IMG/VR virus record: IMGVR_UViG_3300030329_006583
Location: 62,001-126,000 of that record
DNA: 64,000 bases
Direction: 5' to 3' (one strand)
Within the stretch, counting starts at the first letter, position 1; each line of letters begins with the position of its first letter. The translations under genes were made by a program, and so were the position numbers. Of the stretch, positions 12,182-33,633 are shown one piece after another. The notes under the pieces are model-generated. The model was given only the letters and a program-made list of their open reading frames with translations. It did no database searches and had not been told where the DNA came from.

Positions 12182-14956
12182 TTAGTTAGTGGAAAGAGGG
12201 GGAGGTCCATTCATACCAGCATCACGACCGGTCGGATCAATCTCAGTCATATTTAACTGAAACCACCTTCCGTTGGTGTTGTTACGAATAGTAAGCATGG
12301 ACTCTTCCTCGACGATTGTCCAGTTACCACGGCTATTTGCAAGGTGAAGGTCACCTGTGTAGATGTTACCAAACCTCAATGCCGCCGTACCTAGGTCTAC
12401 ACCTAAATCACTACTAGGCTGGATTGAAGCAGCAGTAACACTAACATCATTGCTACCAGCATCTATCACAATATCAGCGGCTTCACCTCGAAGTGCAATA
12501 GTGGAATTACCACTATCTTCACCGATCCGAATGGTACGTGTACCGTTTGTACCGATGTTGATGTTTTGGTTAACATCATCACCACCCAAGGTAATTGTGC
12601 CACCGGATGATTCAAGCGCTATATTGCTTGAGGCATCAACCTCGAATGTGGTAACATTTGCAACACTTAATGCCCTTGCATCAGACACTGCAATAATGTT
12701 AGAACCACCTTCTTGGAGATTTAAACCACCAGCACCATTAACTGTCAATGCACCAGCAGATGTTGACCAAGTCGCAGCAGCAGCAGAAGTAAGCGTAAGC
12801 GCACCTGCAGAACTGGACCAAGTTGAAGCAGCACCAGCTGTCAATGTGATTGCCCCTGAAGGGGTAACAGACAATGACGTCATACCTGTTTCAGAAACAG
12901 CACCAGATCCATCAAACTCCCATGTACCTGTGTCATCACCAAGTGAAGCACCACTAGCACCTGTCACAGACATTGTACCAGCAGCCGAAGTTACATTAAC
13001 ATTACCAGCGGCGGCATCAATGGAAATTCCACCAGATGAAGTATCAAGTGTAATAGCACCAGATGCGTCCAGATCGAATGTTGATGAATCAACATCAAGT
13101 GCAACATCTGCAGCAGTACCAATTGAAATGCTATCAGCGGAGTCAATTGTCAATGCACCTGTAGCATCAATGTCCAGTGTTGTACCGGTATCCATGTTGA
13201 TACTACCAACATCGAAGTGTATACCACCAGCAGCATCTGTAGTCTTGAATGCAAATGCGTTAGCACTTCCAACAGAACCTGTAAACTGCAATTTACCACC
13301 ATTACTACGCATGAGCGCACCATTATCGGCTTCTATATGAACACCACCAGCACCTTGAGCACTGTAAAGCTTCACTGCAGGCCATGAACTCCTGGAACCT
13401 GACATAACGTTCCACCCTGATGATCGTGTGTACACGTTTCCACTAGCACAATTGACATCAAAGTCACCGCTGGAAAGATCAACATCCATCTCTGCAGCAT
13501 CTGCATCAATTTTACCGTTGGCGCTCAGGTGAATACCACCAGAAGTACCATTGGCGACTAGTTGAACCGCCTGGTTGTCATCCTCACCACCGACCAGTTG
13601 AACCGATCCGGCGCCGTTAGTCAAGACAATGTCTTTTCCTACACCACCCTGGGCACCCAGGTATATACCACCAGCAGAACCGATGTCAACTGCACGAGCC
13701 TGAGCATTAGCACCAGTCAAAGCCAGCTTTGTACCCGCACGGACTGCGAGCCATTGGCCGGAGTTATTGACATAGTTAGCTGCATCTCCAAAGGTGAGCT
13801 TGTTAGTGCTATTGAGTGTCAGACCTGTTCCGTCAGTATGAGTCAGAGTTGTATCAGAATCAGCACCAAAACTAAGGACAGCTGAATCAGAGAGAAGCTT
13901 GACATCATTACCAAGAACTGCATCTTTAACAACACTCAAACCACCGTCAGTCTGAAGTGAACCATCTGTTATAGAAGTGGCATCAGTTGCATCATCAACA
14001 ATAACCCGACCACCAAAATAACCTTGTTTTACAACACTCAAACCACCATCAGTTTGAAGTGAACCATCTGTTGTAGAACTGGCTTGTGTTGCATCATCAA
14101 CGATGACTCTTCCATCGGCGGTAAGTTGACCGGCAGACGTAATAGTAACACCGGAAGAACCGGCTCCGCCAGCAACATCAAAATCGCCATTGTCTTCAAC
14201 GCGGAAGACCTCCGTGCCATCATACTGCTTAAATACAAAATCATCAGAATCAACCTTGAGTTGCATAATGATCTCGCCAGCGGTTCCATCCATGTCAAGT
14301 GCCAATTGGGCTACACCACCGTCTTCGAATGAAATGTCACCAGAATCGGAATCAATTTTGACTGAATTGGCAGCATCCAGTTCAATATTTCCATCAGAAA
14401 CAAGATCCAAAATACCGTCAGCAGACTGATAAATGTACGTACCGGTATCACCAAAGTTAAGTTTAGCGTCAGTTGTCGAAGCACCGATTGTCACATCACC
14501 TGTGCTATCATTGTAAGTTAAATCAGCAGCACCACCAAAATCACCGTCATTATTGTATTGAACTTGTGTGTTTGAGCCTTTAGCATCACGATGGTCTGAA
14601 CCTGATTGTAGGCGAACACCATCCCAATAAAGATGACTTCCAACATTATAAAGCTTGTCGGTTGTATTACTGGGGGCGCTCATTTGCTCAAGGTTAAACG
14701 CACCGGATGCCACCAAGTCGCCACCGAAACAAGCAACACCAAAAGCATGCTCGCCAGCTTCCTTACCTTTACCGTCAATATTACCGGAAACGAAAAGAAG
14801 CACATCCTGACCGGGAAGGGCCGGGAATGCTGTTGCAGCGGCGGACTTTTTTCCACCTGGTCTAGCCACGATAAACGATCCTGTTAAACCTACATTATGT
14901 TGGCCATTACCTGCATTAGAAGCAGACATCTGGCTAAGTATTAATCCATTTGCCAA
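12182..14956 (-). CDS. Long tail fibre / fibre-like virion protein (924 aa), TTG start
   Basis: Rich in G/S/T/A/D with beta-type repeats. Contains the GSNTQVQYNNDGDFGG fibre motif and a C-terminal RFGNIYTGDLHL..RGNWTIVEE domain. AGGAG lies 7 nt before the TTG. Confidence 0.8.
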   Translation of the reverse strand: MANGLILSQMSASNAGNGQHNVGLTGSFIVARPGGKKSAAATAFPALPGQDVLLFVSGNIDGKGKEAGEHAFGVACFGGDLVASGAFNLEQMSAPSNTTDKLYNVGSHLYWDGVRLQSGSDHRDAKGSNTQVQYNNDGDFGGAADLTYNDSTGDVTIGASTTDAKLNFGDTGTYIYQSADGILDLVSDGNIELDAANSVKIDSDSGDISFEDGGVAQLALDMDGTAGEIIMQLKVDSDDFVFKQYDGTEVFRVEDNGDFDVAGGAGSSGVTITSAGQLTADGRVIVDDATQASSTTDGSLQTDGGLSVVKQGYFGGRVIVDDATDATSITDGSLQTDGGLSVVKDAVLGNDVKLLSDSAVLSFGADSDTTLTHTDGTGLTLNSTNKLTFGDAANYVNNSGQWLAVRAGTKLALTGANAQARAVDIGSAGGIYLGAQGGVGKDIVLTNGAGSVQLVGGEDDNQAVQLVANGTSGGIHLSANGKIDADAAEMDVDLSSGDFDVNCASGNVYTRSSGWNVMSGSRSSWPAVKLYSAQGAGGVHIEADNGALMRSNGGKLQFTGSVGSANAFAFKTTDAAGGIHFDVGSINMDTGTTLDIDATGALTIDSADSISIGTAADVALDVDSSTFDLDASGAITLDTSSGGISIDAAAGNVNVTSAAGTMSVTGASGASLGDDTGTWEFDGSGAVSETGMTSLSVTPSGAITLTAGAASTWSSSAGALTLTSAAAATWSTSAGALTVNGAGGLNLQEGGSNIIAVSDARALSVANVTTFEVDASSNIALESSGGTITLGGDDVNQNINIGTNGTRTIRIGEDSGNSTIALRGEAADIVIDAGSNDVSVTAASIQPSSDLGVDLGTAALRFGNIYTGDLHLANSRGNWTIVEEESMLTIRNNTNGRWFQLNMTEIDPTGRDAGMNGPPPLSTN
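13925..14113 (-). repeat. Intragenic tandem repeat with a 102-bp (34-aa) period in the fibre gene
   Basis: GRVIVDDATQASSTTDGSLQTDGGLSVVK and GRVIVDDATDATSITDGSLQTDGGLSVVK. Confidence 0.9.
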
Positions 14957-15200
14957 GAGATTTCTCCTAAGAATCCAAAAATGCGCTAGGATTCAAATAA
15001 AGAGTTAAAAAAAAAGAAGAGCGTAAATTCACATTAAAAACGTTTGCGCAGACGACAAATAACATGAAATTACGATCTAATTATTAGTGCAAATACAAAA
15101 AAACTAGAGTATTTTTGCAAGACACAAAATTTTAAAATTTAAAATATTTTGCTATTTGAAATAGGGTGAATTTTATATTTCTGGCGGGTCAAAAAAAAAA

Positions 15201-16853
15201 TTAATCTTTTATTTCTTCAAGAACAAATTTGTAATGTTTACCATTTTTATTGTTTTTAATGGTAAGGTACTCTTCTTCCTCAACAATTGTCCAATCACCT
15301 CTTTCATTTCGTAAATGAAGGTCACCGGTGTATACGTTGGCAAAACGATTGGTGGAACTCCCTAAATCAACAGTGGAATCTAGGCCCGGGATTATTGATC
15401 CGCTCATTACTAAATCCCCACCAAAAACAGAGGTTCCTTTTATGGTCGAGTCTTTAGAACCAATGGCTCCTGAAACAAAGAAACTAATGTCAGATGCCTC
15501 CTTGGGTTGCATTGCACCTGCAGCCATCCTGCTACCAGATAGAAAAATTACCTGCCTGTTACCGGCCCCATAATGGTCACGCAGTCGCATTATTTCTTCT
15601 ACAGAGGTACCATTAAACACATCAAACTTTAAATCATTAGTGCTTCCATCATGTGATATAGCAGCCCCCACAGTTCCACCTGAACCCGCAAATTCTAATG
15701 TAGAGCTCTCTGAGTTATTATTTCTTTGAAGCCTGATTGTTGGGCTTGAGTCTTTTGCATGCACCAATGTGCTAGGGTTATTAAGACCAATACCAATCCT
15801 GTCTGTATCACCTTTCACATACAATGTGTTATCGTCTCCAAGCGTTCGCACTTGAAAATCAACATCACCGCCATCCCCAATCTTTACGATATCCTGCCCA
15901 GCTTCAGATACGGTAATAAGCTGTTCGCCCCCTACTGTAATTCCAATTGCATCATCAGCAAACTGTATAAATGTGTCACTATCGCCGATGTGTTTGATGT
16001 ACTCTGCAACCTCTACATCCCCTAGAACCCCAAAAGATCCTGTAATTCCAACATTTCCGGAAAATTGTGATCCGGTCAAGGTGGCCACAACTCCATCGTT
16101 AATGTTGAGTGTGACATCCCCACTGGTTCCGCCACCGGTAAGACCAACCCCAGCGGTTACACCGGTAATATCGCCCACCGTGCCGTCATTAATAATTGTA
16201 ACCTGACCATTGGAACCGGTTGATATACCAATCCCTGCGCCGGCAATGAGGTATGATGTTCCATCAACAAGGTGGGTCAATGATCCAGACAGTCCTTGAT
16301 CAAATTTTACGACGCCAGTAAACGTAGAACCAGATATAGTTGCCACCACGTTATTATCAATATTTAGGGTAACATCACCACTAGTGCCCCCACCTATTAA
16401 GCCTGTACCGGCAGTTACCCCGGTGATGTCGCCATCTAGTGTTCTAACGGTAATTGATCGCGATGCAGAGTCGCCCACCAATGTAACATTAGCACCCGCC
16501 TTAAGGGAAAATGTTTTATTTGAAGAATCAAACGATATAGCAGAATCGCCGCTAACACTACCACCATCTGCAGTAAGTGAAATTCTATTAATACCATCAC
16601 CCACACCAGAAGTTCCAGAAAGTAATGGAATTCCAGAAAATGTCAATACACCATTTTCATTATATAATTTGTTTAAAATTTCCGGGGGGGCGCTGTGAGG
16701 TTGGAACACAACACCACGACCTGGCATATTAGGATCCTTTAAACCAATTTGAAAATCAGCCTGAGAAATTATTCGCCTAACTTCTTGATTTTTGGAATCT
16801 TTTAATACCAGAAAAGTTTGTTTTAGCGTTTTGTTTTTATCCTGTATTGCCAT
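15201..16853 (-). CDS. Tail fibre-like virion protein (550 aa)
   Basis: GDITGVTAGxGLxGGGTSGDVTLNI occurs twice, and there is a RIGIGLNNP fibre motif. It has the same C-terminal YTGDLHL domain as the 924-aa protein. Confidence 0.8.
   Translation of the reverse strand: MAIQDKNKTLKQTFLVLKDSKNQEVRRIISQADFQIGLKDPNMPGRGVVFQPHSAPPEILNKLYNENGVLTFSGIPLLSGTSGVGDGINRISLTADGGSVSGDSAISFDSSNKTFSLKAGANVTLVGDSASRSITVRTLDGDITGVTAGTGLIGGGTSGDVTLNIDNNVVATISGSTFTGVVKFDQGLSGSLTHLVDGTSYLIAGAGIGISTGSNGQVTIINDGTVGDITGVTAGVGLTGGGTSGDVTLNINDGVVATLTGSQFSGNVGITGSFGVLGDVEVAEYIKHIGDSDTFIQFADDAIGITVGGEQLITVSEAGQDIVKIGDGGDVDFQVRTLGDDNTLYVKGDTDRIGIGLNNPSTLVHAKDSSPTIRLQRNNNSESSTLEFAGSGGTVGAAISHDGSTNDLKFDVFNGTSVEEIMRLRDHYGAGNRQVIFLSGSRMAAGAMQPKEASDISFFVSGAIGSKDSTIKGTSVFGGDLVMSGSIIPGLDSTVDLGSSTNRFANVYTGDLHLRNERGDWTIVEEEEYLTIKNNKNGKHYKFVLEEIKD
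16056..16433 (-). repeat. Duplicated ~40-aa module in the 550-aa fibre
   Basis: GDITGVTAGTGLIGGGTSGDVTLNIDNNVVATISGSTFTG and GDITGVTAGVGLTGGGTSGDVTLNINDGVVATLTGSQFSG. Confidence 0.85.
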
Positions 16854-16870
16854 TGCATAATCAACCTATA

Positions 16871-19576
16871 TCATAGTTCGTCTATTTCCGTTATAACTAT
16901 AGACGTTTTCAAATATGGATCATCATTTCTATCAACTGCAATTCCGTCAAAATAAGGTAAGGAAGATGTAGAGTGCGGGCTTAGATTTTGGGATATTGTA
17001 TCCATGGCATCAATTAAATCGTTATCATTATTTACAAATTTTATATCTATCGCCGGCTCCATTACCTTAACTAGTGCATCGATAGAATTGTTGTAAAATG
17101 CAGTATATTGTCTTTGTTCTAACCTATCCCTAAATTGACCGTATCTATCGTAGCGATACACCGCAGAGTTATAAAGAGGATCAATATTAATCAAACCATA
17201 CCTTAATGCATGGGCACCACTAAATTTTTCATCATCAATGACCTGTGTTCTTGTGGCCATTGTTCCTCCAGATAATTTTTTGGTTAAGAATTGTTCATTA
17301 TTAATCCCGACCTGAAATATAAATCTTCTTACATCTTTGGGTTCTGTTAAAATCTCAATCTGTGTATCACCAACAGAACCACTCAGTACCACAAAACCGT
17401 CATCAGAAAGAACACGTGTTGGATTTCCAACATACGGAAATGGCAAAGACCTGTATCCTTTCCATGTAGTTGTATCTCCATCTTGGGAAATTTCAAGGGC
17501 TCCTGAGAAATAATAGGCATTAACGTTAATTCTCTTAAATTGCCTTTGGCTGAAAATTGTACCACTCATCGCTAATCTACCAAAATAATTTTGTAAATTT
17601 GGCATCAATGAATCATAATATATCTCATTACTATCGATTATTTTTACGCCTTTAAGTAATGATCCTGTTGTGCCTTGCGTTCCCTCAGTGCACCGACCAA
17701 CAACGCCCCTAGTTCCCGCAGAAAGTTTTCCATCATACACTTCGTCAATATAGGTGCCTCTATACGTGTAAAAAGGTTCATTCTGGTATTGATCAACAGT
17801 ATCATAATTACCTAATGCCTCATGAATGGCGTCTGATGTTAGAGGCTGGTTTGTTTGACCGATGGTTGGGTAATTATCACAAACAATGGTTCCAAACATC
17901 GTTATTTTGCTCGGTCCTTTGGACATTACGTTGCGAAAAGTCTGAGCAAAGCCCGCTTCTGTGGCAGGATCACCGGTGGCTTTGTTCAAGGCAGGACATT
18001 GTTGGTTTGCCATCCCTATCACTAATTTGTCTGTTGGCATTAAAATATAGGGTGAATAACTCCTTAGGCTTCCATAGGGTTGGATGTATTGTTGATTTGG
18101 GTATACAGTGGAAGGAAATTTAAATGCGCTACCACTAGTTATTCCACCTACCACGCTGGCTTGAAAACTCCTTCCTGAAGCATTGGCAAACATATCACGG
18201 CCACCATCCGGATTGCCAAAATATGTCATATCATAATTTGCGCTGTCATATAATCGATCACGAGTAAATGTTCCCACCAATGCATTAGGATAAATTCCCG
18301 GGGTAACTGCAATCATTGGCAACTTAAATGTTCCCGTAACACCTGCATTGGTTCCGGTTAACACTAGGTTTTTTCGTTGATAACGACTTAATTGGTGCAC
18401 AGGAGCTGACGATTTACCGAAGGTACCGTATGTGATAACCTCTTTTTCCCTGTTGACAGTGTAAGGTCCATTAAAATTATCGTAATATTCATCTGTTTCA
18501 AGATCAAAATATATCTGTTTACCCGTATATACCTGCCTGTCTACCGGGGTTTCAAATTGATTTAAAATAAAGAATGCACCAGCTTGCGCAAATTTACCGT
18601 CATCTAATGCATCAATTGAAAATGTATTAACACTACCGGTCCATTCAAATGTTATTCTTTCAACCATAAATGGGTGATTAATATAATCTGACATATGCAG
18701 CAATTGAGAACCGGTGGCATCAAATTTTGAAGCCAACGGAAAACCGGCAAAATTTGAAGGAGCACCAGATGCCCTACCGGTTTTTTTAGGCACTTCACCC
18801 GTCAGGGCATTATCGGCTATGCCATTAGGAAATGCAATATAAGAAGACGATCTAACTGTGTTTGACCTATTTAAAAAATCAACATTACTACCGGTTGTAA
18901 GATCACCGATAATCTCCCATTGTTTTTGTTTCCAGTTAAAATATGCAATACCAGAATTAATTCCTGCCGCCAATCCCAATGCAGAATTTGCATATGGCGA
19001 ACTATGTGCCGATGTACCGGTGCTGAAATATATGTCGGTGTCGGTGGCAGGATTGAGTTCTATAACAATCTGTCTTTTATCTTTTAAAGGTGAACTAAAC
19101 CCAAAACCCATTGCAGGTTGTGGTCCACGCAAGGTATAAAACGACGATGTTGCGTTTAAATTAACCCGAGAATCATCATATGGTTTTAATGATTGTGAAG
19201 ATAAATTATTTGTTGTTAAACGAAACATTTTATCTGATACACCGGCAACAATACCGCGTGAAACAAAAATGCTGCCCGTGGTATTAGGATTGGCTATGCC
19301 GATAGAATAACCCTCTTTATTTTCAACAGAGGATGACCCAAAAATATAATCCGGTGGTAACATCAAAGGATATGACATTCCAACGGGTGATTGTGAATTA
19401 TTGGGAACTGATGCTGAAAACATCAAGGTAAGAGTATCATCAAAGATAGATGGTGTTTGCTTTACATAATCCTGATCACCGGTTCTTTTCAGTGCAGGAT
19501 ATGTTCCCATCGCCTCATCTTGCAACCTTAATTGCACACGGGGTGGTAATCCTAAAAATGGTCTTTTATTGCTCAC
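16871..19576 (-). CDS. Hypothetical virion structural protein (901 aa), rich in [ST]G[ST]
   Basis: Long ORF with GTG start after GGGAG; lies between baseplate and fibre genes. Confidence 0.7.
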   Translation of the reverse strand: MSNKRPFLGLPPRVQLRLQDEAMGTYPALKRTGDQDYVKQTPSIFDDTLTLMFSASVPNNSQSPVGMSYPLMLPPDYIFGSSSVENKEGYSIGIANPNTTGSIFVSRGIVAGVSDKMFRLTTNNLSSQSLKPYDDSRVNLNATSSFYTLRGPQPAMGFGFSSPLKDKRQIVIELNPATDTDIYFSTGTSAHSSPYANSALGLAAGINSGIAYFNWKQKQWEIIGDLTTGSNVDFLNRSNTVRSSSYIAFPNGIADNALTGEVPKKTGRASGAPSNFAGFPLASKFDATGSQLLHMSDYINHPFMVERITFEWTGSVNTFSIDALDDGKFAQAGAFFILNQFETPVDRQVYTGKQIYFDLETDEYYDNFNGPYTVNREKEVITYGTFGKSSAPVHQLSRYQRKNLVLTGTNAGVTGTFKLPMIAVTPGIYPNALVGTFTRDRLYDSANYDMTYFGNPDGGRDMFANASGRSFQASVVGGITSGSAFKFPSTVYPNQQYIQPYGSLRSYSPYILMPTDKLVIGMANQQCPALNKATGDPATEAGFAQTFRNVMSKGPSKITMFGTIVCDNYPTIGQTNQPLTSDAIHEALGNYDTVDQYQNEPFYTYRGTYIDEVYDGKLSAGTRGVVGRCTEGTQGTTGSLLKGVKIIDSNEIYYDSLMPNLQNYFGRLAMSGTIFSQRQFKRINVNAYYFSGALEISQDGDTTTWKGYRSLPFPYVGNPTRVLSDDGFVVLSGSVGDTQIEILTEPKDVRRFIFQVGINNEQFLTKKLSGGTMATRTQVIDDEKFSGAHALRYGLINIDPLYNSAVYRYDRYGQFRDRLEQRQYTAFYNNSIDALVKVMEPAIDIKFVNNDNDLIDAMDTISQNLSPHSTSSLPYFDGIAVDRNDDPYLKTSIVITEIDEL

Positions 19577-19594
19577 GACGCTATGCTCCCCATT

Positions 19595-20749
19595 TTATTT
19601 CTTTAAACCCCCATATACTATAGAATCAGTGCCCATATTCCAACCTGTATGATATGAAATTGCATATTCAAATCCGGATGTGGTACCATATACGTTCTTA
19701 TCAAACATTGATAAAACAGCAGACCCAGTGGCATTAAAAAGTATATTTTTAAATTCTGAGTCATTTTCAAGATTATTTGTCAACCCCCTCCCTTCAGAGG
19801 AAAATATAGAAGAAATACGAGCCTCTATATAACTTTCATCAGCAAAGGGTTTAATCTGGCTGGAGGTAATTACTGTTTTAACAATTCTATTTGTTGCCCC
19901 TGCAGGTAGAAATATAGGTAAATCTGTAATATTTTGTACCGGCGGATTTAAATTATCTGTGGGAATGTCTATATTAAATGCGGCAATTTCCCAATTTATA
20001 TTATAAGTTATCCATTGATCAGGTGTAAAAGACGGGTATTTCAATCTTCCAAACGAACCCGATGTATACCTTAAAACACGTCGATCATTAAATGGAGATA
20101 TTGGTTCACTATAATGCCTTCTCCCATTACCTGGTACCTCTTGTTCTTGAACAATGAATATATTAGGTCTTTGATTTATTGTGACAGGACTAGAATAATC
20201 AAGTGGCTCATTACTCAAATCTGCCTGCATAGATTCACGTTTATCATATGAAAGAGGTACCGTAAAATCAATCTTTTTACGAATGGGAAAAACCTCCACA
20301 ATACCGTTTAATTGCCCTAATGCAACATTTGATTGGCATCTATCTAGTGGTGATAAACTAGCAGTGATTGAAACATCATTAAGTAAAAATGCATTAGACC
20401 CCGAAGGATTTGTATTGATGGAATTTTTATCCACAAACATTATTCCATCGCCAATATTTCTTTCGAGTGTCGTTTGACCAAACATCAATTCTTCATATTC
20501 GTGATTAATGATAACATGATATCCTGGTCGTACCCCAATATTTTCACTACCTATTCCAGCCTGGGAGTCGTTAAAAGATATGCCTAATTCGCCATGGCTA
20601 CCCGACAGTGCCAAGCGTGACATTGGGCCCATTGATAAATGGGGAAGCAATGACATAAAATTATATTTTAATTTATTTGCACTAATCCCTTGCCTAAATG
20701 AAGACATGGTACCTGATAGTGTGATGCTGCTTCTTTTAGTACTCGCCAT
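19595..20749 (-). CDS. Hypothetical virion structural protein (384 aa)
   Basis: ORF tightly packed in the structural operon; contains SGS/TGS motifs. Confidence 0.7.
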   Translation of the reverse strand: MASTKRSSITLSGTMSSFRQGISANKLKYNFMSLLPHLSMGPMSRLALSGSHGELGISFNDSQAGIGSENIGVRPGYHVIINHEYEELMFGQTTLERNIGDGIMFVDKNSINTNPSGSNAFLLNDVSITASLSPLDRCQSNVALGQLNGIVEVFPIRKKIDFTVPLSYDKRESMQADLSNEPLDYSSPVTINQRPNIFIVQEQEVPGNGRRHYSEPISPFNDRRVLRYTSGSFGRLKYPSFTPDQWITYNINWEIAAFNIDIPTDNLNPPVQNITDLPIFLPAGATNRIVKTVITSSQIKPFADESYIEARISSIFSSEGRGLTNNLENDSEFKNILFNATGSAVLSMFDKNVYGTTSGFEYAISYHTGWNMGTDSIVYGGLKK

Positions 20750-20757
20750 TACCTTTC

Positions 20758-23700
20758 CTATGAACTATTGGGAACAATTGTTATAACCCATGTATTTTCT
20801 GTGTCAGATATTTCCACAAAATTTTCATACACCTTTTGAGGTGCAGCACCGGGACCAACATCCTCATAACCTACAACTTTATCTTTCACGCGTAACCTAG
20901 GTGGCACAAATATATCTGCCCAATCATATCTAAATTTTGCCCTCTCCAACATGTGTGATTCAATAGTAAATTGCACACCTAAAAAGTCTGTCTTTCGCGG
21001 TAGTAATCTTTCAATGATTATACCAATGGAATCATCAAACCACCGATAAAATTCAAAAAACTCTTTAATTTTAATTCGAGACGTCAATCTATTAAAATAA
21101 ATGTCTCTTAAATTCTCTAATGTAGGATATTCATCTGCAAACAAGTATTCCGTATTGCCTATAATGTTGTTCCATTCATCAAGAGTTGAAAACATGTTTA
21201 TTATATCTTCATTTAAAGCCTGAACAAATGAATTTTCTACAATAAAACGCGTGTCATCCTGTGGTTCTTCGCTTCTTAAGACATTGTATGTCGGTGTTGC
21301 AGAGGCATTATTCTCTATTTCATCTGCCCGATTAGAAAAACTTCTTATCCTCACTTTGTTTTCAGCGCTTCTTTCATCAAATTTTGGATCAATATATGAA
21401 TAATCAAACCTCTGTGAACGAAACGCCAACCTGTTGGGTTCAAAGCCGGTACCCGACATTGCGTACATTACTTTGGTACCATGGCCGTCCTCTGTAGAAG
21501 GACGCCAAGGAACGCCGCGGCACCCGCTAGCAAAATTCTGGCTATAATCAAATAAAACCACGTTGCCGCCGGCGGAGGCAGACTTTATTAATTGATCACC
21601 GCTAACATCCAATCTTAACCTTTCAAATGATCCGGTGGGAGTGGTGGTAAAGTTAAAGTTGACAAAAGGATTATTAACCCCTAGTGATTTAGGATTCCTG
21701 GTGCGCTCCTTAAATTCTGCATCTGTTAAAGCCTTGCTCCAGAATCGGATTTGAGAAACTTCACCGCTAAACCTAGTTTGGCGTGAAAGAGAGGGCACCA
21801 CGGGATCGTCTTGATTTAAATACAATCCCCTAGCATCTACATATAGGCTTTGGCTTCCGATGGTAATAAACGATCCCGAAGTATTACTATCATATTTTTT
21901 ACTTAATGCATCTCTTTCAGGATTTAATGATGCATATTTATCTGTCCATGGCAAAAACAATGTTGAGCTCATGTGATATTCGGTAATGCTTCCATAACTT
22001 TGCTTTGCAGCCTTAAGAAAATACGAAGAAGATATTACCGATCCAATTTCTTCACCGCACCTTCTCCCCCAACCGATTTTCCAGGTGTTACCATCAAAAA
22101 TATTTACACCTGTTAACACCATTTCCAGTGTAGGCATTTGTATAGAGCCAGGTGCAGCTGTGTCAATCCTGCCTGGGCGACCAAACAAAAACAAAGATGA
22201 TGTGGTCACATTTCCCACTTGACCCACGGTACCTGAAATTGCTATTAAATTAAACATAACACCGTGTTGACCACTTAAATTACTATTTGTGCCGGTTACA
22301 TTAAGCCTCATTAAACTCTGGGTTGCAAAATGAGTTGAGCTAGTAGGGATACTGGTAACGTCAAACCTATATAATGCTTCATATGTAAAAGAACCAGACG
22401 TAAACAATCCATCGTCAGGATTTCGAGAGATACCGTGTAAAAAAGTATTATGTGAAACATTTGGGCCACCAGATGGTGCATATTCATATGAACGCACCAT
22501 AGGCCCTTGAGGGGAAGGCATACCGACTTCAACCCTGGAAGCTGAAAGAAATGGGGAAATAATGAATGGCACATTAGGATGTACGCCCAGTGTATCTGTC
22601 GTAGCTGCAGTGGGGTTGGGTGCCAACGTTGCAGAATAATTAAGCATTCCTAAATGATCTGTTTTTAAACGCCGACTATCCTGTATTTTTGTTGATTTTG
22701 GACCACCGAATTCTCTAATTCTAAAATTATTATCCGGATTTAAACCAATAGATCTTATTAGCGCCTTGATTGAATGCACTGTGCCTTTACTGGTTATAAT
22801 TTCTTGAATATTGGTTAAAACTCTGCGCCATAATTCATTTTGCACATACCGTAATCCAAATTGACTATATGAAGGATCTGCCAATAAATTTTCACCATCC
22901 AAATATTGCTTCAATCCTGCATTAGAATAAAAACTCGGTAGCTGAAACCCATAATGATTTCCTAAAAATGTCAAAAACTGATCTGCGATTGTATTGTCTT
23001 TATCGTAATCCACACTCAACAAATCTGAAAAGTGATCTGTATACATTTTTAATTCATCAAAATATTTTCCCCACATTAACATCATTAATGACATTAATTG
23101 TGAAGATCCTAATTTTCCGCCCCCTGGAAAACTAATAGAACCTGTAGAATAAGGTTTGTCTAATTCACCCTTTATTGTAGAAAAACCTTCTGTAAATTGA
23201 GATTCCATCAAATAATGCGGTGGTATTAATTTTGTAATGAGGTTTGGATTATTTGCGTCATAAACACTGGCAGAAAGTAATAAATTTTTATTTAAATTCA
23301 TTACATTATCAACATAAGGAAAGAGTATCGGATTTAATTCAGCTCTTTCGTTTTTAATGGGCATTTTACCGGTTAAACCTATAACCTTTTCTACCTCACG
23401 TAAAGAACTAGTAAAATTAGTAATTGTTGAATGTAACGATTTTCCTGAACTATCTAAAACTAAATTATTGTTAGAATATGAACCACTAGGCTCATTAAAC
23501 TTAAAATATAATCTTAAATCTGGTGAAGAATAGACGTTTTTATAAAGAAATTCTTTTTGTTTAGTTTTTTCAATTACTGTATTATAAAGACGAAATTCAT
23601 CAATTGCACCTGACAATGTTTGTTTGGGTATAAAGTATTCTGGTTCCAGTGTAGTTGCATTTGTACCTGATATTACCAAACTTCCCGAACCTATAATAAA

Positions 23701-24600
23701 ATCACTGGCAATGAATTTAAAATCACCAAATGTGCCGGCGCTGCGAGATTTCGAGAACAATGTACCTGTTTTGTACATTTTAATGTCAGCCAATGTAGGC
23801 ATAGAAAAATTATCATAAACAACACTAACATAATTGAATCTACCTTTTTGTATTTGCATACTCGCAGATAAAACACCTGTAGAATCAGCAGAACTTCCGG
23901 AACTTATTACAAAAAATAGATCACATGTCTCAGTTGAACTAGAATCTGCAAGACCCAGCGTCAGGTGATTGCTGGCATCATAATATTTTTGTGCTATTAT
24001 TTGATTATCGTTTACTTGTGGTGGTACAAATACTGTCATTTCAAATGTAAGTGAATCATTTAAATTAGGACCAATAACAACATCACCCGTTTTGTCTTTG
24101 GATAATGCAGGATATAGGTTACCCGCCGAATCTTTAACACTTATATATGTTCCTAAATCTTTAGAAAATCCATTGGCCGGTGTTTCATCCACCATAGTGC
24201 CTGAAAAGTGTAAAAAGCCTCTATATTTTGGGAATCTATCGTAGATGTATTTTTCATAGCCTGTAAGTTCATCAAAAAATGCCTCAAATTCCTTTTTATT
24301 CCCATCAAATGGAAATTCATTAATTATTTTATCAAATGATACATTCACCTTTGATTCAGCTGAATTAAAAAATGTATGATTTTCAAAATTCACCCAATTA
24401 ATCGGAAGTTGTTGAGTTGATTTCATACCTTGTCGCCAGTGTGTAAGATATCTAAACGAACTGGTAGAATCCACATTAGTGTCTATAAAATTTTGCGATG
24501 AATCCAAAGCGGTTGGTGCAGATTCATAAAGTATTTTTTGTAACGTTGTTGGGGAAAATAACGACGTTTTTTTAAATAAGGAATCTTCGTTATTTGCCAT
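20758..24600 (-). CDS. Baseplate wedge-type protein (gp7/P2 gpI-like core) with LamG/concanavalin-like domains (1280 aa)
   Basis: LamG-type ends (LSGAIDEFRLYN; FSGEVSQIRFWSKALT) and a wedge-type segment ELWRRVLTNIQEIITSKGTVHSIKALIRSIGL..IREFGG. It follows the baseplate J-like gene. Confidence 0.65.
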   Translation of the reverse strand: MANNEDSLFKKTSLFSPTTLQKILYESAPTALDSSQNFIDTNVDSTSSFRYLTHWRQGMKSTQQLPINWVNFENHTFFNSAESKVNVSFDKIINEFPFDGNKKEFEAFFDELTGYEKYIYDRFPKYRGFLHFSGTMVDETPANGFSKDLGTYISVKDSAGNLYPALSKDKTGDVVIGPNLNDSLTFEMTVFVPPQVNDNQIIAQKYYDASNHLTLGLADSSSTETCDLFFVISSGSSADSTGVLSASMQIQKGRFNYVSVVYDNFSMPTLADIKMYKTGTLFSKSRSAGTFGDFKFIASDFIIGSGSLVISGTNATTLEPEYFIPKQTLSGAIDEFRLYNTVIEKTKQKEFLYKNVYSSPDLRLYFKFNEPSGSYSNNNLVLDSSGKSLHSTITNFTSSLREVEKVIGLTGKMPIKNERAELNPILFPYVDNVMNLNKNLLLSASVYDANNPNLITKLIPPHYLMESQFTEGFSTIKGELDKPYSTGSISFPGGGKLGSSQLMSLMMLMWGKYFDELKMYTDHFSDLLSVDYDKDNTIADQFLTFLGNHYGFQLPSFYSNAGLKQYLDGENLLADPSYSQFGLRYVQNELWRRVLTNIQEIITSKGTVHSIKALIRSIGLNPDNNFRIREFGGPKSTKIQDSRRLKTDHLGMLNYSATLAPNPTAATTDTLGVHPNVPFIISPFLSASRVEVGMPSPQGPMVRSYEYAPSGGPNVSHNTFLHGISRNPDDGLFTSGSFTYEALYRFDVTSIPTSSTHFATQSLMRLNVTGTNSNLSGQHGVMFNLIAISGTVGQVGNVTTSSLFLFGRPGRIDTAAPGSIQMPTLEMVLTGVNIFDGNTWKIGWGRRCGEEIGSVISSSYFLKAAKQSYGSITEYHMSSTLFLPWTDKYASLNPERDALSKKYDSNTSGSFITIGSQSLYVDARGLYLNQDDPVVPSLSRQTRFSGEVSQIRFWSKALTDAEFKERTRNPKSLGVNNPFVNFNFTTTPTGSFERLRLDVSGDQLIKSASAGGNVVLFDYSQNFASGCRGVPWRPSTEDGHGTKVMYAMSGTGFEPNRLAFRSQRFDYSYIDPKFDERSAENKVRIRSFSNRADEIENNASATPTYNVLRSEEPQDDTRFIVENSFVQALNEDIINMFSTLDEWNNIIGNTEYLFADEYPTLENLRDIYFNRLTSRIKIKEFFEFYRWFDDSIGIIIERLLPRKTDFLGVQFTIESHMLERAKFRYDWADIFVPPRLRVKDKVVGYEDVGPGAAPQKVYENFVEISDTENTWVITIVPNSS

Positions 24601-24602
24601 AA

Positions 24603-26189
24603 TTAATTAACCTTGAAACTAGTGTTAAGCGCCTGACTTATAACATTTCCCCCGGCTTCTTTATGAAGAAATTCAATTGTATAAATTCCACCTTTAGGTA
24701 AATCCATTGTCATTTCAAAATACATGCCTTCCGAATCAGATGATAATTTAGTCCCATTATTTTCTGTTTCAAATGGGATATATATTTCGCCGCTATTCAT
24801 ATCCTTTACACGATAATAAACATCACTCATAAAAATACTTTCAAGACTATAAGGTAGCCTTTTTGCTTTATAGACTGCATTAAAATCCCTCACAAAGACC
24901 CTGAACAAGGCTTTTTCATGTTGTTTATATTCGTTTTTTGAATTAGTTATAATAAAATTTAAATCCATGGGATTAACATTAAATGCCACCCTGTTAATTC
25001 TATCAATTTTAAGGCTACCGGTATAATAACCAACAGTTCCATCTGCAGAGCTCCAATATTCATCAAATGTAATTGAACCACTACGGGTAATCATTTCTGC
25101 CAGCGTGGTACCCCATGATACAAAATTGGAATCATCAGATGGAATGGCAAATGAAGCAGAATAAACCCCTGTCACATAATTAATAAAATCTGCGCCGCCT
25201 GCATGGGCTACGCGGGTGCCGGCTTGGTGTTGTGAAGCATTTGCGGTAAAACTAAACGATCCGGTTCGTAATGTCAACAACATACAATTAGCACCAGTCA
25301 CCTCAGTAAGGGCTGAACCTGAAACAATATTTGCCGGTAGGCCACGATGGAAATTCTTTAAAAATAAAGAACCACTTAGATCAAAATAAAATGATTTGTG
25401 ATGATCTATGACTGTATCATCCCATATCACATCCAACCTTGGCCTTAATTTTGCATTCCTAACATGGCGTGAGGCAAATCTTTTAACAAAACGTGTTTTG
25501 GTATCTTCTTCTTGGGAACCTGTGAATGAAAGCCGAAATCCGTGATCAGGTAAAATGCCTGCCAATGTTGCTGAGACAATTTTTGTCACGTCCATTGTAA
25601 GATTTTCAGTGCCTAATTCAAAATTCTGCGAAACCCCCAAGGCCTGCATCCCTTGTCCATCATTTAGGTTTCCAGAAATTATTATATCAATATTGGCCGG
25701 ATACCCATCGGCCGCTGTGGAATCAATATTCCCTTGTGCATTAGCCCCTGATAGGTGCCATTTGTTTAACGTACTGCCAATAAAAGAAGAAGTCAAGAAA
25801 TTAGCAGCGCCGAGATCATTATATGATGCCACATTCCTACCAATTCCTTCCTCAAAACTTTGAGAAAGTGGAAATAGCATTACATTAAAATTGGTTGGAG
25901 TAAGTTGTCCACCCATTATATCATATAGGTTTAAATTACATTTAAATTTAGAACTATTGATATTGAGCGTCTGATTCATGTGTTCCCTAATTCTAGAATA
26001 ATCAAACTTAATCAATAATCGGGTTAGCTCATTAGGTTTGTCAGTACCAGTAATCACAGATTCATTATATAAACGATATAAATCAAGTGTTGATGCATAT
26101 CCTACATTGGCATTAGATGCACTAAAATTATTATCAATGATTTTATTGGTTATGTAAGTATCCTTGCTGGCGCTTAATATAAGATACAT
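24603..26189 (-). CDS. Baseplate-associated structural protein with DNRLRE-like N-terminal domain (528 aa)
   Basis: ASKDTYI...TRLLIKFD...DVTKIV...HGFRL...FASR...RPRLDVIW pattern. Confidence 0.55.
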   Translation of the reverse strand: MYLILSASKDTYITNKIIDNNFSASNANVGYASTLDLYRLYNESVITGTDKPNELTRLLIKFDYSRIREHMNQTLNINSSKFKCNLNLYDIMGGQLTPTNFNVMLFPLSQSFEEGIGRNVASYNDLGAANFLTSSFIGSTLNKWHLSGANAQGNIDSTAADGYPANIDIIISGNLNDGQGMQALGVSQNFELGTENLTMDVTKIVSATLAGILPDHGFRLSFTGSQEEDTKTRFVKRFASRHVRNAKLRPRLDVIWDDTVIDHHKSFYFDLSGSLFLKNFHRGLPANIVSGSALTEVTGANCMLLTLRTGSFSFTANASQHQAGTRVAHAGGADFINYVTGVYSASFAIPSDDSNFVSWGTTLAEMITRSGSITFDEYWSSADGTVGYYTGSLKIDRINRVAFNVNPMDLNFIITNSKNEYKQHEKALFRVFVRDFNAVYKAKRLPYSLESIFMSDVYYRVKDMNSGEIYIPFETENNGTKLSSDSEGMYFEMTMDLPKGGIYTIEFLHKEAGGNVISQALNTSFKVN

Positions 26190-26202: not shown

Positions 26203-28053
26203 TTAAGCCGATGTTCCCAAAATATCAAAATCAGGAAATTTTAATTGAAAAATGCTTCCCGCCGGAGGGACTATCATTCCTCTCACCTCCAAATTTCTGG
26301 GGGTGAATGTCACATTATCATAATTTCGCCCATCTATTATACCATAACGTGCCGTTATGCGTGGTAATTCAACCATTGATATTACACCCTGGGTATTAAC
26401 AATTATATTCACAATATCAGATAAAACTATGGGTTGATTAATTTGAAAATTATCAACTGTAAGAATTCCCTTTAATCTTTTTGCAACTTGTTGGATCACC
26501 AATTGTTTGTTGGCGCTTGGATTTGACACAATTGAAAATGAAACTGCAAAATTTAAAACCCTTGCGTCTAAAATATCCATTGCATCTGACACTAGTCTAA
26601 ATTCATTCAAATACGTACTTAAATTCTTTTTTAAGGCATCTGTAGCCGGTACCAAATGATGTTGTTGGTTTTTACAAATAACATGCAAATTTGCTGCCAA
26701 CATATTATTTGGGTTAGATGAAATTGCCGCACGATAAACCCTGCCAAATGTGGTAGGCAACGTGTAAATCCTGGCCAGCGTATCAGCCTTGCTAACCATA
26801 CGAGATTGCATTTGTCTTGCCTGCGGTATTTGTGCCCTTAGTTCTTCCAACGTGGGGGCGGGTAAACCGCCGACTGCATTTGTTTCATTGTTGGCACTAA
26901 CAGAATTTTTAACTTGCTCACCGATAACGGGATCTACAATATTTTTAAAAGTAAACCCAAGTTGAACAATTGTGTTAATTGCGCCGGGATCTGCATTATG
27001 ACTTAAACCACCACCATGCCGGTACTTGATTCTAAGCGTTGTGTTTTTAGGAGAAAATCCCAATGTTTGGCTCTTAAGTAGCGAATTGGGATCAATAACA
27101 AATCTTGAAAAGGTTTTTTTACCAAATAATGGAAGCGCTAACTCACTGGGATCTGGAATAATATCATCATCCAATGTATCTGCATCTCCTCCCCCAAACA
27201 CCAATTTTGTGGTCCTATCAAGCGGGTCTGTAAGCACCATAAACCTTCTGGGGGCAGGAATTATTTCCATTTGTTGCTTTACAATCTCACCATCTTTACC
27301 AATTGTAGGAGAGCCGCCATACACCACATCCTGACTCAGTGAATTCACCTCATAATACTGGTTTAAATTTGAATCCACAACTGAAATAACTTCTGTAATA
27401 TTAGGGTGAGGTAAAGGTATTCTCCTAAATGGAACATGTGAATTTGGTATATTAATAGTGTAAATAGATTCATTACCAGAAACACATGTTCCAACCAAAC
27501 TCAACGTATATGACATAGGCAATCCATTACTGTCTACTGTCAAAACCTGACTTGTGGCCTTAACATCCCCGAAAGGATCTTTTTTTCGAAAATCCAATTC
27601 ATCCACCAGATTAAAAATAATACCATTATTGGCGCTAATACGTGTACCTATTTCAATAACAGGCAAAGCATCCTCCATGGGACGCTTTTGACCATCCGGA
27701 GCTGTTTCTGCGGGCACAATTATACTAAATGTAACGTCCGCACTTGCGGGTGAGGCACCCGCGATAGGAACCCCGGCTGAACGCAGGTGCCTTACTACAT
27801 TGCTGGGTTCAACGGCCGTTAATGCGTTTAATTCATTGAATTGGTGATCCAAATAGAAAGACAATGAATCACCCACAAAAGCGGCCATATCCAAAAAGAG
27901 CCCGCCTACACTTCCTTCTGAGAAATCCTTGATTTTATCTGGGAAGTATGTTTTTGCATAACTCAATAATTCCGCCCTAAAACCATCGAAGTCCTTTGAG
28001 AGATAATTTCTCTCTTTTTCTTTTTTAACCTTTTTCTGAATATCTTGAGCCAT
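26203..28053 (-). CDS. Baseplate wedge subunit, gp6 / baseplate J-like
   Basis: N-terminus YLSKDFDGFRAELLSYAKTYFPDKIKDFSEGSVGGLFLDMAAFVGDSLSFYLDHQFNE; also AVGG..APTLEELR..Q.RMVSKAD and FQINQPI. Adjacent to the gp25-like gene. Confidence 0.88.
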   Translation of the reverse strand: MAQDIQKKVKKEKERNYLSKDFDGFRAELLSYAKTYFPDKIKDFSEGSVGGLFLDMAAFVGDSLSFYLDHQFNELNALTAVEPSNVVRHLRSAGVPIAGASPASADVTFSIIVPAETAPDGQKRPMEDALPVIEIGTRISANNGIIFNLVDELDFRKKDPFGDVKATSQVLTVDSNGLPMSYTLSLVGTCVSGNESIYTINIPNSHVPFRRIPLPHPNITEVISVVDSNLNQYYEVNSLSQDVVYGGSPTIGKDGEIVKQQMEIIPAPRRFMVLTDPLDRTTKLVFGGGDADTLDDDIIPDPSELALPLFGKKTFSRFVIDPNSLLKSQTLGFSPKNTTLRIKYRHGGGLSHNADPGAINTIVQLGFTFKNIVDPVIGEQVKNSVSANNETNAVGGLPAPTLEELRAQIPQARQMQSRMVSKADTLARIYTLPTTFGRVYRAAISSNPNNMLAANLHVICKNQQHHLVPATDALKKNLSTYLNEFRLVSDAMDILDARVLNFAVSFSIVSNPSANKQLVIQQVAKRLKGILTVDNFQINQPIVLSDIVNIIVNTQGVISMVELPRITARYGIIDGRNYDNVTFTPRNLEVRGMIVPPAGSIFQLKFPDFDILGTSA

Positions 28054-33627: not shown

Positions 33628-33633
33628 ATTTTT

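What the first reader, a model, noticed from the sequence alone, without database searches (positions are those of the whole stretch)
12182..26189. [S/T]-G-[S/T] tripeptide enriched only in a subset of baseplate and fibre proteins: candidate O-glycosylation sequon
Seen (approximate manual counts): about 7 in the 528-aa protein, 13 in the 1280-aa, 5 in the 384-aa and 11 in the 901-aa, plus many SAS/TSS variants and further copies in both fibres. By contrast there are about 2 in the 2250-aa protein, about 1 in the 934-aa, and none noticed in the 616-aa gp6-like protein. Composition alone predicts roughly 1 in the 528-aa protein. The motifs are dispersed through apparently different folds (LamG, DNRLRE-like, fibre) rather than forming tandem repeats, and they are often preceded by a hydrophobic residue (LSGS, FTGS, YTGS, VSGS). 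Established: Ser-Gly contexts are acceptors for proteoglycan xylosylation and for autotransporter heptosylation. Inference: these are acceptor sites for the neighbouring glycan island, giving a glycan coat on the host-facing end of the virion.
Basis: partly seen in the sequence, partly recalled or inferred. Interest (0 to 1): 0.82.

Follow-up and report, generated by a model that had tools for sequence, protein, structure and literature searches.

The report
Conserved Ser/Thr-Gly-Ser/Thr motif in phage tail proteins
Five unrelated outer-baseplate and fibre proteins of a marine jumbo phage carry about 4.4 times more Ser/Thr-Gly-Ser/Thr tripeptides than chance predicts, at positions conserved across a large phage group that always encodes its own sugar-transferring enzymes, so these may be sugar-attachment sites, though nothing here proves it.

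Summary
In the five enriched proteins [ST]G[ST] occurs 44 times against 9.9 expected (Poisson p = 1.6e-15). SGS and TGS are the two most over-represented of all 8000 tripeptides. Codons vary, so selection acts on the protein.

The four main families share no detectable homology. The motif sits in mixed predicted contexts: strand starts and ends, a hairpin turn, helix caps. Most of the excess comes from near-invariant columns. In 120 homologues of the 528-aa protein the flanking residues change almost only between S and T, and the glycine is 93-99% conserved. The adjacent gp6-like protein in the same phages is at background (0.74x).

T4 and TJE1 show no enrichment and lambda only about 1.7x overall. 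Distant relatives do: Flavobacterium phage immuto, Microcystis phage Mel-JY01 and, more weakly, Rhodothermus phage RM378. Each also carries the orthologous pair of soluble GT4 glycosyltransferases, or in RM378 one GT4 plus a degenerate second copy.

The glycosylation reading is therefore not refuted, and it is the best single explanation (about 0.38). It remains unproven. No relative lacking glycosyltransferases was found, sites do not turn over, and in distant relatives the GT4 pair sits among replication genes, which fits DNA glycosylation instead.

The parts
24603..26189 (-). 528-aa peripheral baseplate protein. It has a DNRLRE/CBM96-like N-terminal domain followed by Ig/FN3-like beta-sandwiches, and 7 motifs: TGT47, TGS223, SGS272, SGS290, TGS309, SGS370, TGS390.
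   Evidence: 7 against 1.1 expected. Across 120 homologues the mean is 7.75 against 1.45 expected, and six sites are held in 95-119 of 120 sequences. AlphaFold2 model pLDDT 86.4. DNRLRE match E=1.4e-5, below the family cut-off.
20758..24600 (-). 1280-aa baseplate protein with a LamG_3 domain (aa 182-344) and 13 motifs.
   Evidence: 13 against 2.9 expected. LamG_3 domain found by Pfam. Sites 133, 305, 735 and 989 are conserved in 5 of 5 syntenic orthologues at 42-50% identity. From my own knowledge, site 372 (NEPSGS...DSSG) resembles the usual N-terminal signature of LamG_3 domains.
19595..20749 (-). 384-aa baseplate protein with 5 motifs.
   Evidence: 5 against 0.9 expected. This family diverges fast (19-30% identity). 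Three sites are kept in 3 of 5 orthologues.
16871..19576 (-). 901-aa baseplate or fibre-attachment protein with 11 motifs.
   Evidence: 11 against 2.1 expected. Of 39 homologues, 37 are enriched 1.9-5.4x and two are below 2x. There are 12 conserved motif columns with composition T57/S22, G83, S61/T20 percent. Five of the only seven hydroxyl positions conserved at 90% or more lie in motifs (Fisher p=7e-4). AlphaFold2 model pLDDT 67, good over residues 160-560.
15201..16853 (-). 550-aa tail fibre with 8 motifs, 4 of them in an internal repeat.
   Evidence: 8 against 2.8 expected, p=0.0065. Matches phrog_38058, tail fibre. Sequence contexts.
12182..14956 (-). Distal fibre of about 915-924 aa. The likely start is the ATG at 14929. 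It carries 7 motifs but is not enriched.
   Evidence: 7 against 5.2 expected, p=0.26. Gly is 14% and GC 46%. Start codon seen.
26203..28053 (-). gp6-like inner baseplate wedge protein. It serves as an internal negative control, with 0 motifs.
   Evidence: Matches Baseplate_J and phrog_6. Across 120 homologues the count is 80 against 108 expected, or 0.74x, which is within the range of control tripeptides.
32464..34890 (-). Two paralogous soluble GT4 glycosyltransferases (418 aa and 387 aa) directly upstream of the baseplate operon. They are the candidate initiating enzymes.
   Evidence: Both match Glycos_transf_1. Both keep the EX7E motif, and it is conserved in orthologues. The pair is conserved in all marine relatives and in immuto and Mel-JY01; RM378 has one GT4 plus a second copy that lacks the second Glu. 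No membrane-spanning segments.
35016..58988 (-). Glycan island. Sugar-nucleotide genes: UDP-glucose dehydrogenase-like, epimerases/dehydratases, DegT aminotransferase, PseB-like dehydratase, two formyltransferases, GNAT acetyltransferase, methyltransferase, UDP-galactopyranose mutase, carbamoyltransferase, and a PfkB kinase with a cytidylyltransferase-like partner. Transferases: GT9-like, GT4 and several GT2. A PD-(D/E)XK nuclease is embedded at 35880-36707.
   Evidence: Pfam results. None of the encoded proteins has a membrane-spanning-like segment, so there is no flippase, polymerase, ligase or polyprenyl-phosphate priming transferase.

Best explanation
[ST]-G-[ST], most often T/S-G-S followed by a hydrophobic residue, is a short linear motif under strong purifying selection in the outer baseplate and fibre proteins of a large clade of aquatic myoviruses. 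The most likely function is as an O-glycosylation acceptor site.

Proposed mechanism, all steps inferred: the conserved pair of soluble GT4 enzymes adds the first sugar in the host cytoplasm to one or both hydroxyls of the motif on tail proteins. The strain-variable sugar island then supplies and extends unusual sugars. The result is a glycan coat on the host-facing end of the virion.

Shown here: the enrichment, its specificity to certain proteins, its conservation, the soluble glycosyltransferase and sugar-nucleotide gene set, and the co-occurrence of the two across the clade.

Not shown: that any of these proteins is glycosylated, which enzyme would act, or which residue would accept the sugar.
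For: 1. The enrichment is extreme and specific. The count is 44 against 9.9, SGS and TGS are the top two of 8000 tripeptides, and both flanks are required.

2. Selection acts on the protein, because the codons are diverse.

3. The four main families share no homology (hhalign probability below 1%). The sites occupy different predicted contexts: after a strand into a helix cap (223), strand start (272), two-residue hairpin turn (309), helix C-cap into a strand (370) and mid-strand (390). A single structural idiom does not explain this easily. A trans-acting reader of a linear motif does.

4. Conservation is specific to the hydroxyl. In 120 homologues of the 528-aa protein the flanks swap almost only between S and T, for example S81/T38, S87/T33 and T66/S40. 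N, D and A are rare. In the 901-aa family, 5 of 7 conserved hydroxyl positions are motif residues.

5. The effect is specific to the clade. T4 baseplate and fibre proteins are at expectation, lambda is about 1.7x overall and TJE1 shows none. Marine relatives, immuto, Mel-JY01 and, more weakly, RM378 do show it, in the tail genes examined (whole-genome scan for RM378 only).

6. Among 50,697 phage genomes, the best matches to the window's GT4 are exactly the phages that share this baseplate.

7. The island encodes only soluble proteins, so the acceptor is a cytoplasmic macromolecule.

8. The neighbouring gp6-like protein in the same phages is at background, 0.74x against 5.4x.

9. One lineage (loci L009/L011) lost most sites in three of the four proteins at similar overall identity. 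It also lacks sugar genes next to its GT4 pair. This is a single case.
Against: There is no direct evidence of glycosylation.

Most of the excess sits in near-invariant columns inside the most conserved sequence blocks. Outside those columns the motif is only 1.44x expected, and about 1x among close relatives. This is unlike a density-selected glycan shield.

Gly and both hydroxyls are about equally conserved, with a positional preference for T first and S third. That could equally reflect a structural requirement.

Other proteins in the window do not avoid the motif (19 against 15.3). The gp6-like family does not either. The tripeptide alone therefore cannot be the whole recognition signal.

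In Mel-JY01, RM378 and L011 the GT4 pair and its PD-(D/E)XK neighbour lie among replication and nucleotide-metabolism genes.

The co-occurrence with glycosyltransferases is a clade-wide trait, so it amounts to one evolutionary event rather than independent replication.

From my own knowledge, at least one site (aa 372 of the 1280-aa protein) matches a common LamG_3 signature, which shows the tripeptide can be purely structural.

The GT4s show only generic GT4 similarity to solved structures (MshA, BshA, TreT and chlorovirus B736L).
Confidence: 0.38

Rival explanations
1. A purely structural idiom. The tripeptide would be a preferred way for this clade's beta-sandwich tail proteins to begin or end strands and make tight turns. 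Gly would provide backbone freedom or tight packing on the core side, and Ser/Thr would cap the backbone. The glycosyltransferases would be unrelated.
For: Sites are fixed and lie in the most conserved blocks, with no turnover. Hydrophobic residues flank the motif. DSSP places sites at strand boundaries, in a hairpin and at helix caps, where Gly and Ser/Thr are common in any protein. From my own knowledge one site matches a LamG_3 signature. Lambda tail proteins show a mild excess of about 2x without any glycosyltransferase.
Against: The structural contexts are heterogeneous, so this is not one structural element. The families are non-homologous. T4's beta-rich baseplate and fibre proteins show no excess. 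Asn and Asp, the usual alternatives in capping and turn motifs, are almost excluded at the flanks. A universal structural rule would not be confined to one clade, or to only some tail proteins of the same virion: the 2250-aa and 934-aa proteins (not enriched) and gp6 (background in 120 homologues).
Confidence: 0.3
2. The motif is a recognition or contact element for a shared protein partner rather than for an enzyme. The partner could be a tail-assembly chaperone, or the motif could be a recurring inter-subunit contact in the baseplate periphery.
For: The same short motif occurs in several non-homologous proteins that assemble together. It is strictly conserved in position, and proteins outside the module do not avoid it.
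Against: No candidate chaperone was identified. Having 5-13 copies per protein spread over many domains is unusual for a docking motif. Nothing in the tools speaks to interfaces.
Confidence: 0.1
3. The motif is real, but the sugar genes serve another target. They might glycosylate phage DNA to evade restriction, or feed the host's surface polysaccharide pathways. If the motif hydroxyls are modified at all, the modification would be something else, such as phosphorylation.
For: A PD-(D/E)XK nuclease followed by the GT4 pair is conserved, and in Mel-JY01, RM378 and L011 it lies with PolB, clamp loader, ribonucleotide reductase, IMPDH or Prim-Pol genes. The GT4s match Pfam 'GT4-conflict'. The moraphage paper (PMC12619734) lists DNA glucosylation, serotype conversion and virion glycosylation as open possibilities for that lineage's four core glycosyltransferase groups.
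Against: No hydroxymethylase or other base-modification gene lies in the window, though only 64 of 267 kb was seen. No protein kinase lies in the window. This rival explains the glycosyltransferases but leaves the motif unexplained.
Confidence: 0.15

Closest known systems
Mycobacteriophage virion glycosylation (Freeman et al. 2023, cited in PMC12619734; the paper itself could not be opened)
   Same: Phage-encoded glycosyltransferases lie next to structural genes. Cytoplasmic O-glycosylation of virion proteins is the proposed outcome.
   Different: As summarised in PMC12619734, the glycans there sit on the C-termini of capsid and tail-tube subunits. Here the candidate sites are internal tripeptides in baseplate and fibre proteins of myoviruses that infect Bacteroidota and cyanobacteria. 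A large sugar-nucleotide island is also present, and no biochemical evidence exists.
HMW1 adhesin and the HMW1C/NGT cytoplasmic glycosyltransferase (from my own knowledge)
   Same: A soluble cytoplasmic enzyme decorates dozens of short sequons on a large beta-rich surface protein before assembly or export.
   Different: That system is N-linked at N-X-S/T and uses a GT41 enzyme. No GT41 is present here, and the motif is hydroxyl-Gly-hydroxyl.
Serine-rich repeat adhesins glycosylated by the GtfA/GtfB pair (from my own knowledge)
   Same: Two adjacent GT4-fold proteins act on Ser/Thr separated by a small residue (S-A/V/E-S).
   Different: Both phage GT4s keep the catalytic EX7E motif, whereas GtfB is non-catalytic. 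The acceptor sites are dispersed in folded domains, not in long tandem repeats. Similarity to GtfA is marginal (E=0.0038 in NCBIfam, 0.095 in PDB). There is no accessory Sec system.
Moraphages, a lineage of aquatic jumbo phages of Bacteroidota (PMC12619734)
   Same: These are aquatic phages of up to about 300 kb, with Bacteroidota-type relatives, gp6, gp25 and PhoH as core genes, and four core glycosyltransferase orthogroups of unknown role.
   Different: Whether this contig belongs to that lineage was not tested. The paper does not report any motif in tail proteins.
Bacteroidota general O-glycosylation sequon D-(S/T)-(A/I/L/V/M/T) (from my own knowledge)
   Same: It is a three-residue O-glycosylation sequon used in the likely host phylum.
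   Different: The motif is different, and that system is periplasmic and built on a lipid carrier. The phage island has no membrane components.

Membership tests
Protein O-glycosylation sequon (generic) | The motif is over-represented in target proteins after composition correction. | tested here: met
   44 against 9.9 expected. SGS and TGS are the top two of 8000 tripeptides.
Protein O-glycosylation sequon (generic) | The acceptor hydroxyls are solvent-exposed. | tested here: inconclusive
   Only DSSP strings were available, not coordinates. Reading the sequence around in-strand sites places the hydroxyls in register with polar residues and Gly in register with hydrophobic residues, which suggests exposure.
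Protein O-glycosylation sequon (generic) | A glycan is attached at the motif, shown by mass spectrometry or staining. | not testable with these tools
   This needs virions of immuto, Mel-JY01 or RM378, or recombinant co-expression.
Protein O-glycosylation sequon (generic) | Motif density co-varies with presence of the transferase across independent lineages. | tested here: inconclusive
   All clade members carry a GT4 orthologue. T4 and lambda, which show little or no enrichment, were not among the tblastn hits to this GT4; TJE1 has only a remote GT4 homologue and shows no enrichment. No independent gain or loss was found. One lineage with fewer sites also has fewer nearby sugar genes.
GtfA/GtfB with serine-rich repeat proteins | A pair of adjacent GT4-fold proteins, one of them catalytically dead. 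| tested here: not met
   The pair is present, but both copies keep EX7E across orthologues, except the second copy in RM378.
GtfA/GtfB with serine-rich repeat proteins | Specific sequence similarity to GtfA. | tested here: not met
   Only marginal hits: TIGR02918 at E=0.0038 with 16 bits against a cut-off of 575, and PDB entry 5e9t at E=0.095.
Autotransporter heptosylation (TibC/Aah type) | A dedicated protein heptosyltransferase together with an ADP-heptose supply. | tested here: inconclusive
   A GT9-like protein scores exactly at the Pfam threshold (22 bits). A PfkB kinase and a cytidylyltransferase-like gene are present. Membership of the TibC/Aah family specifically was not tested.
Proteoglycan xylosylation | A GT14 xylosyltransferase and acidic residues flanking Ser-Gly. 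| tested here: not met
   No GT14 domain appears in the window. The flanks are hydrophobic, not acidic.
LamG_3 domain signature | The motif lies in the conserved N-terminal strand of a LamG_3 domain. | tested here: inconclusive
   Pfam places a LamG_3 domain at aa 182-344 of the 1280-aa protein. From my own knowledge, the NEPSGS...DSSG stretch at 372 looks like the start of a second LamG-like unit. This could explain at most 1-5 of the 44 sites.

The most novel reading that the evidence does not exclude
A huge, abundant clade of aquatic myoviruses uses a defined tripeptide O-glycosylation sequon, T/S-G-S/T. More than 1300 homologues of the 528-aa protein turned up in metagenomes. A conserved, phage-encoded, cytoplasmic GT4 pair would read the sequon. 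Hypervariable sugar islands would then build strain-specific glycans on fixed sites of the outer baseplate and fibres. That would amount to a phage counterpart of O-antigen diversity, displayed on the virion's host-contact surface.
Probability: 0.3. Interest if true: 0.85.

Novelty: new variant of a known kind. Interest (0 to 1): 0.62.

Why it matters
Virion glycosylation in phages has so far been shown mainly for mycobacteriophage capsids and tail tubes, without a simple sequon. Suppose these tripeptides are acceptor sites. The many unexplained glycosyltransferase and sugar-nucleotide islands of marine jumbo phages would then have a concrete substrate. Sites could be predicted from sequence alone. 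Host recognition, defence evasion and particle stickiness in the ocean would involve phage-made glycans.

If the motif instead proves structural or an assembly signal, it is still a strikingly conserved, clade-specific feature of non-homologous tail proteins, and it needs an explanation.

Three cultured phages make the question directly testable: Flavobacterium phage immuto, Microcystis phage Mel-JY01 and Rhodothermus phage RM378.

Tried and rejected
- **DNA-level motif.** Rejected, because 38 different codon strings encode the 44 sites.
- **Shared domain ancestry.** Rejected at hhalign sensitivity. All pairs among the four families score below 1% probability, although the alignments held only 5 sequences each.
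- **Generic property of myovirus or phage tails.** Rejected. T4 shows none, lambda about 1.7x and TJE1 none.
- **Beta-solenoid rung motif,** suggested by the 18-20 residue spacing of sites 272, 290, 309 and 370, 390. Rejected. The confident AlphaFold2 model shows Ig/FN3-like sandwiches with the sites in different elements.
- **Selection against the motif in the neighbouring gp6-like protein,** as a sign of a promiscuous enzyme. Not supported. The ratio of 0.74x lies within the 0.06-1.69x spread of control tripeptides.
- **Turnover of sites as in viral glycan shields.** Not seen.
- **Close or annotated relatives.** There is no nucleotide match in GenBank phages and no tblastn hit for the 901-aa protein. 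The 528-aa and 1280-aa proteins hit only Mel-JY01, weakly.
- **Solved structures.** None exists for the 528-aa, 1280-aa or 901-aa proteins beyond inserted LamG/pentraxin domains.
- **Literature.** Searches for glycosylated phage baseplates, Mel-JY01 or RM378 glycosylation found nothing relevant. The Freeman 2023 paper could not be opened.

Full report
**Setting**

The window is part of IMG/VR contig IMGVR_UViG_3300030329_006583, which is 267 kb long. All genes are on the minus strand. In transcription order the window reads:
- a tubulin-like gene and a PIN-PhoH gene;
- a sugar island of about 24 kb (58988 down to 35016);
- two GT4 glycosyltransferases (34890-32464);
- small and unknown genes;
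- gp25-like (28542-28057) and gp6-like (28053-26203) baseplate genes;
- proteins of 528, 1280, 384 and 901 aa;
- two fibres;
- proteins of 533, 934 and 2250 aa.

**Check of the observation**

Against 2000 composition-preserving shuffles:

| Protein | Observed | Expected | p |
|---|---|---|---|
| 528 aa | 7 | 1.1 | <5e-4 |
| 1280 aa | 13 | 2.9 | <5e-4 |
| 384 aa | 5 | 0.9 | 5e-4 |
| 901 aa | 11 | 2.1 | <5e-4 |
| 550-aa fibre | 8 | 2.8 | 0.0065 |
| 924-aa fibre | 7 | 5.2 | not significant |
| 2250 aa | 2 | 3.3 | not significant |
| 934 aa | 1 | 1.7 | not significant |
| gp6-like | 0 | 0.7 | not significant |

- Pooled over the five enriched proteins the count is 44 against 9.9, p=1.6e-15.
- An unbiased scan puts SGS and TGS first and second of 8000 tripeptides, with SAS fourth.
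- Patterns with a hydroxyl residue on one side only are at expectation, so both flanks matter.
- Codons are diverse.
- Hydrophobic residues are over-represented directly before and after the motif, 55% against 33%.

**The enrichment is a clade property**

- The 901-aa protein has 39 homologues at 22-56% identity. Of these, 37 are enriched 1.9-5.4x and two are below 2x.
- Four marine metagenome relatives keep the gene order gp25, gp6, 528-like, 1280-like, 384-like, 901-like. They show the same contrast: gp6 has 0 motifs and the next genes are enriched.
- The gp6-like protein finds three more distant relatives at 29% identity: Flavobacterium phage immuto, Microcystis phage Mel-JY01 and an uncultured 484-kb phage.
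- In immuto and Mel-JY01 the genes downstream of gp6 are again enriched 3-9x.
- A whole-genome scan of Rhodothermus phage RM378 shows enrichment only in a block of seven hypothetical proteins at 64.8-76 kb, with 25 against 7.1 expected. Capsid, sheath and portal are at expectation.
- Controls: T4 baseplate and fibre proteins are at expectation. Lambda is about 1.7x overall. Tetrasphaera phage TJE1 shows none.

**How the excess is built**

- In the 901-aa family, 12 alignment columns carry most of the motifs. Their composition is T 57% and S 22% at the first position, G 83% in the middle, and S 61% and T 20% at the third.
- Examples are STGT (31 of 31), TTGSNVD (29 of 31), ATGSQLL (26 of 31) and TTGSLLRG (30 of 31).
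- Outside these columns the motif is only 1.44x expected, and about 1x among close relatives.
- Five of the seven hydroxyl positions conserved at 90% or more in this divergent family are motif residues.
- In 120 homologues of the 528-aa protein the mean is 7.75 motifs against 1.45 expected. Six sites are held in 95-119 of 120 sequences. Flanks swap almost only between S and T, and Gly is 93-99% conserved.
- Site 390 (YYTGSL) is still present in Mel-JY01 and immuto at about 25% identity.
- Over 120 homologues from this phage group, the gp6-like family has 80 motifs against 108 expected. That is within the spread of control tripeptides.

**Structure**

- The four families are not detectably homologous (hhalign probability below 1%).
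- The AlphaFold2 model of the 528-aa protein is confident (pLDDT 86, pTM 0.84). It consists of beta-sandwich domains of Ig/FN3 type. The N-terminal domain is DNRLRE/CBM96-like.
- Its sites fall in different elements:
  - 223 follows a strand and leads into a helix;
  - 272 opens a strand;
  - 290 ends a short strand;
  - 309-311 is a two-residue hairpin turn;
  - 370 closes a helix, with Gly before the next strand;
  - 390 is inside a strand.
- The 901-aa model is good only over residues 160-560. It shows the same mixture.
- Where sites lie in strands, reading the local sequence puts Gly in phase with hydrophobic residues and the two hydroxyls in phase with polar residues. Exposure is therefore likely but was not measured, because no coordinates were available.

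**The sugar genes**

- The island is real. No protein encoded between 32.4 and 59 kb has a membrane-spanning-like segment. It therefore lacks a flippase, polymerase, ligase and lipid-carrier priming enzyme, and the acceptor should be cytoplasmic.
- The two genes next to the baseplate operon are paralogous GT4 enzymes with intact EX7E motifs.
- Among 50,697 phage genomes their best matches are exactly Mel-JY01, immuto, the 484-kb phage and RM378.
- The arrangement PD-(D/E)XK nuclease followed by GT4 and GT4 recurs in every marine relative and in immuto and Mel-JY01; RM378 has a DNA polymerase I-like gene, a GT4 and a degenerate second copy.
- In Mel-JY01, RM378 and the marine relative L011 this block lies among replication and nucleotide-metabolism genes.
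- In L011 no further sugar genes flank it. That lineage has also lost most motif sites in three of the four proteins. This is one case only.
- The GT4s show only generic similarity to solved GT4 enzymes.

**Interpretation**

A clade-specific, hydroxyl-specific, position-conserved tripeptide in non-homologous proteins and in different structural contexts points to a trans-acting reader more than to a universal folding rule. The only candidate readers visible are the conserved soluble glycosyltransferases. A conserved initiating enzyme acting on conserved sites, with a variable island elaborating the glycan, would also explain why sites do not turn over.

I rank O-glycosylation first at about 0.38. 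The other explanations rank as follows:
- a structural idiom, about 0.30;
- the sugar genes serving DNA or host polysaccharide, with the motif unrelated, about 0.15;
- a protein-protein assembly signal, about 0.10.

Its cited precedent of xylosylation does not transfer directly. No GT14 is present and the flanks are hydrophobic rather than acidic. A GT9-like gene and an ADP-heptose branch do exist in the island.

**Literature**

A 2025 paper describes 'moraphages', aquatic jumbo phages of Bacteroidota with four core glycosyltransferase orthogroups of unknown role (PMC12619734). It reports no tail-protein motif. I found no paper describing this motif or glycosylated baseplates in these phages.

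Noticed in passing
window 32464-36707; also L007, L008, L011, L012, L015 (immuto), L016 (Mel-JY01), L017 (RM378): A PD-(D/E)XK nuclease followed by two paralogous GT4 genes is conserved across the marine relatives, immuto and Mel-JY01; RM378 has a DNA polymerase I-like gene, a GT4 and a degenerate copy. In several relatives the block lies in the replication and nucleotide module rather than beside the baseplate genes, which hints at a DNA-related role.
   Followed up: partly
window 35016-35873; L007 618-1475 and 2303-3172: A short UDP-glucose dehydrogenase-like protein of about 285 aa has the N-terminal and central domains only, with no C-terminal domain. It is conserved in relatives and duplicated in one of them.
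   Followed up: no
window 52522-54459: A PfkB-type kinase and a cytidylyltransferase-like gene, which together resemble a split HldE, overlap and sit next to a GT9-like heptosyltransferase. This looks like an ADP-heptose branch carried by a phage. The same kinase and transferase pair occurs in L012.
   Followed up: no
window 59143-61953: A PIN-PhoH fusion protein and a tubulin/FtsZ-like protein lie upstream of the sugar island.
   Followed up: no
window 12182-14956: The distal fibre gene has 46% GC against 36-39% in its neighbours, and 14% Gly. It is the only tail gene in the block that is not enriched for the motif. It may be a recently exchanged receptor-binding module.
   Followed up: partly
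window 14957-15200: An AT-rich 245-bp gap separates the two fibre genes, which are in different frames. The listed TTG start of the second fibre is probably wrong, and an ATG at 14929 is the likely start.
   Followed up: partly
window 15201-16853 (aa 162-195 and 248-275): The 550-aa fibre contains two copies of an internal repeat of about 86 aa (TLNI[DN]..VVA[TI]..[ST]GS.F.G.V). The repeat carries 4 of the fibre's 8 motifs.
   Followed up: no
L009/L011 (ENA ERZ27247425 k141_922525): This divergent relative keeps the GT4 pair. Upstream of it are Prim-Pol and IMPDH genes instead of a sugar island. It has lost most [ST]G[ST] sites in its 528-, 384- and 901-like proteins but keeps them in the 1280-like protein.
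   Followed up: partly
window 945-12120: The three large proteins downstream of the fibres (533, 934 and 2250 aa) have no Pfam or PHROG match and no motif enrichment. Their role in the virion, if any, is unknown.
   Followed up: no
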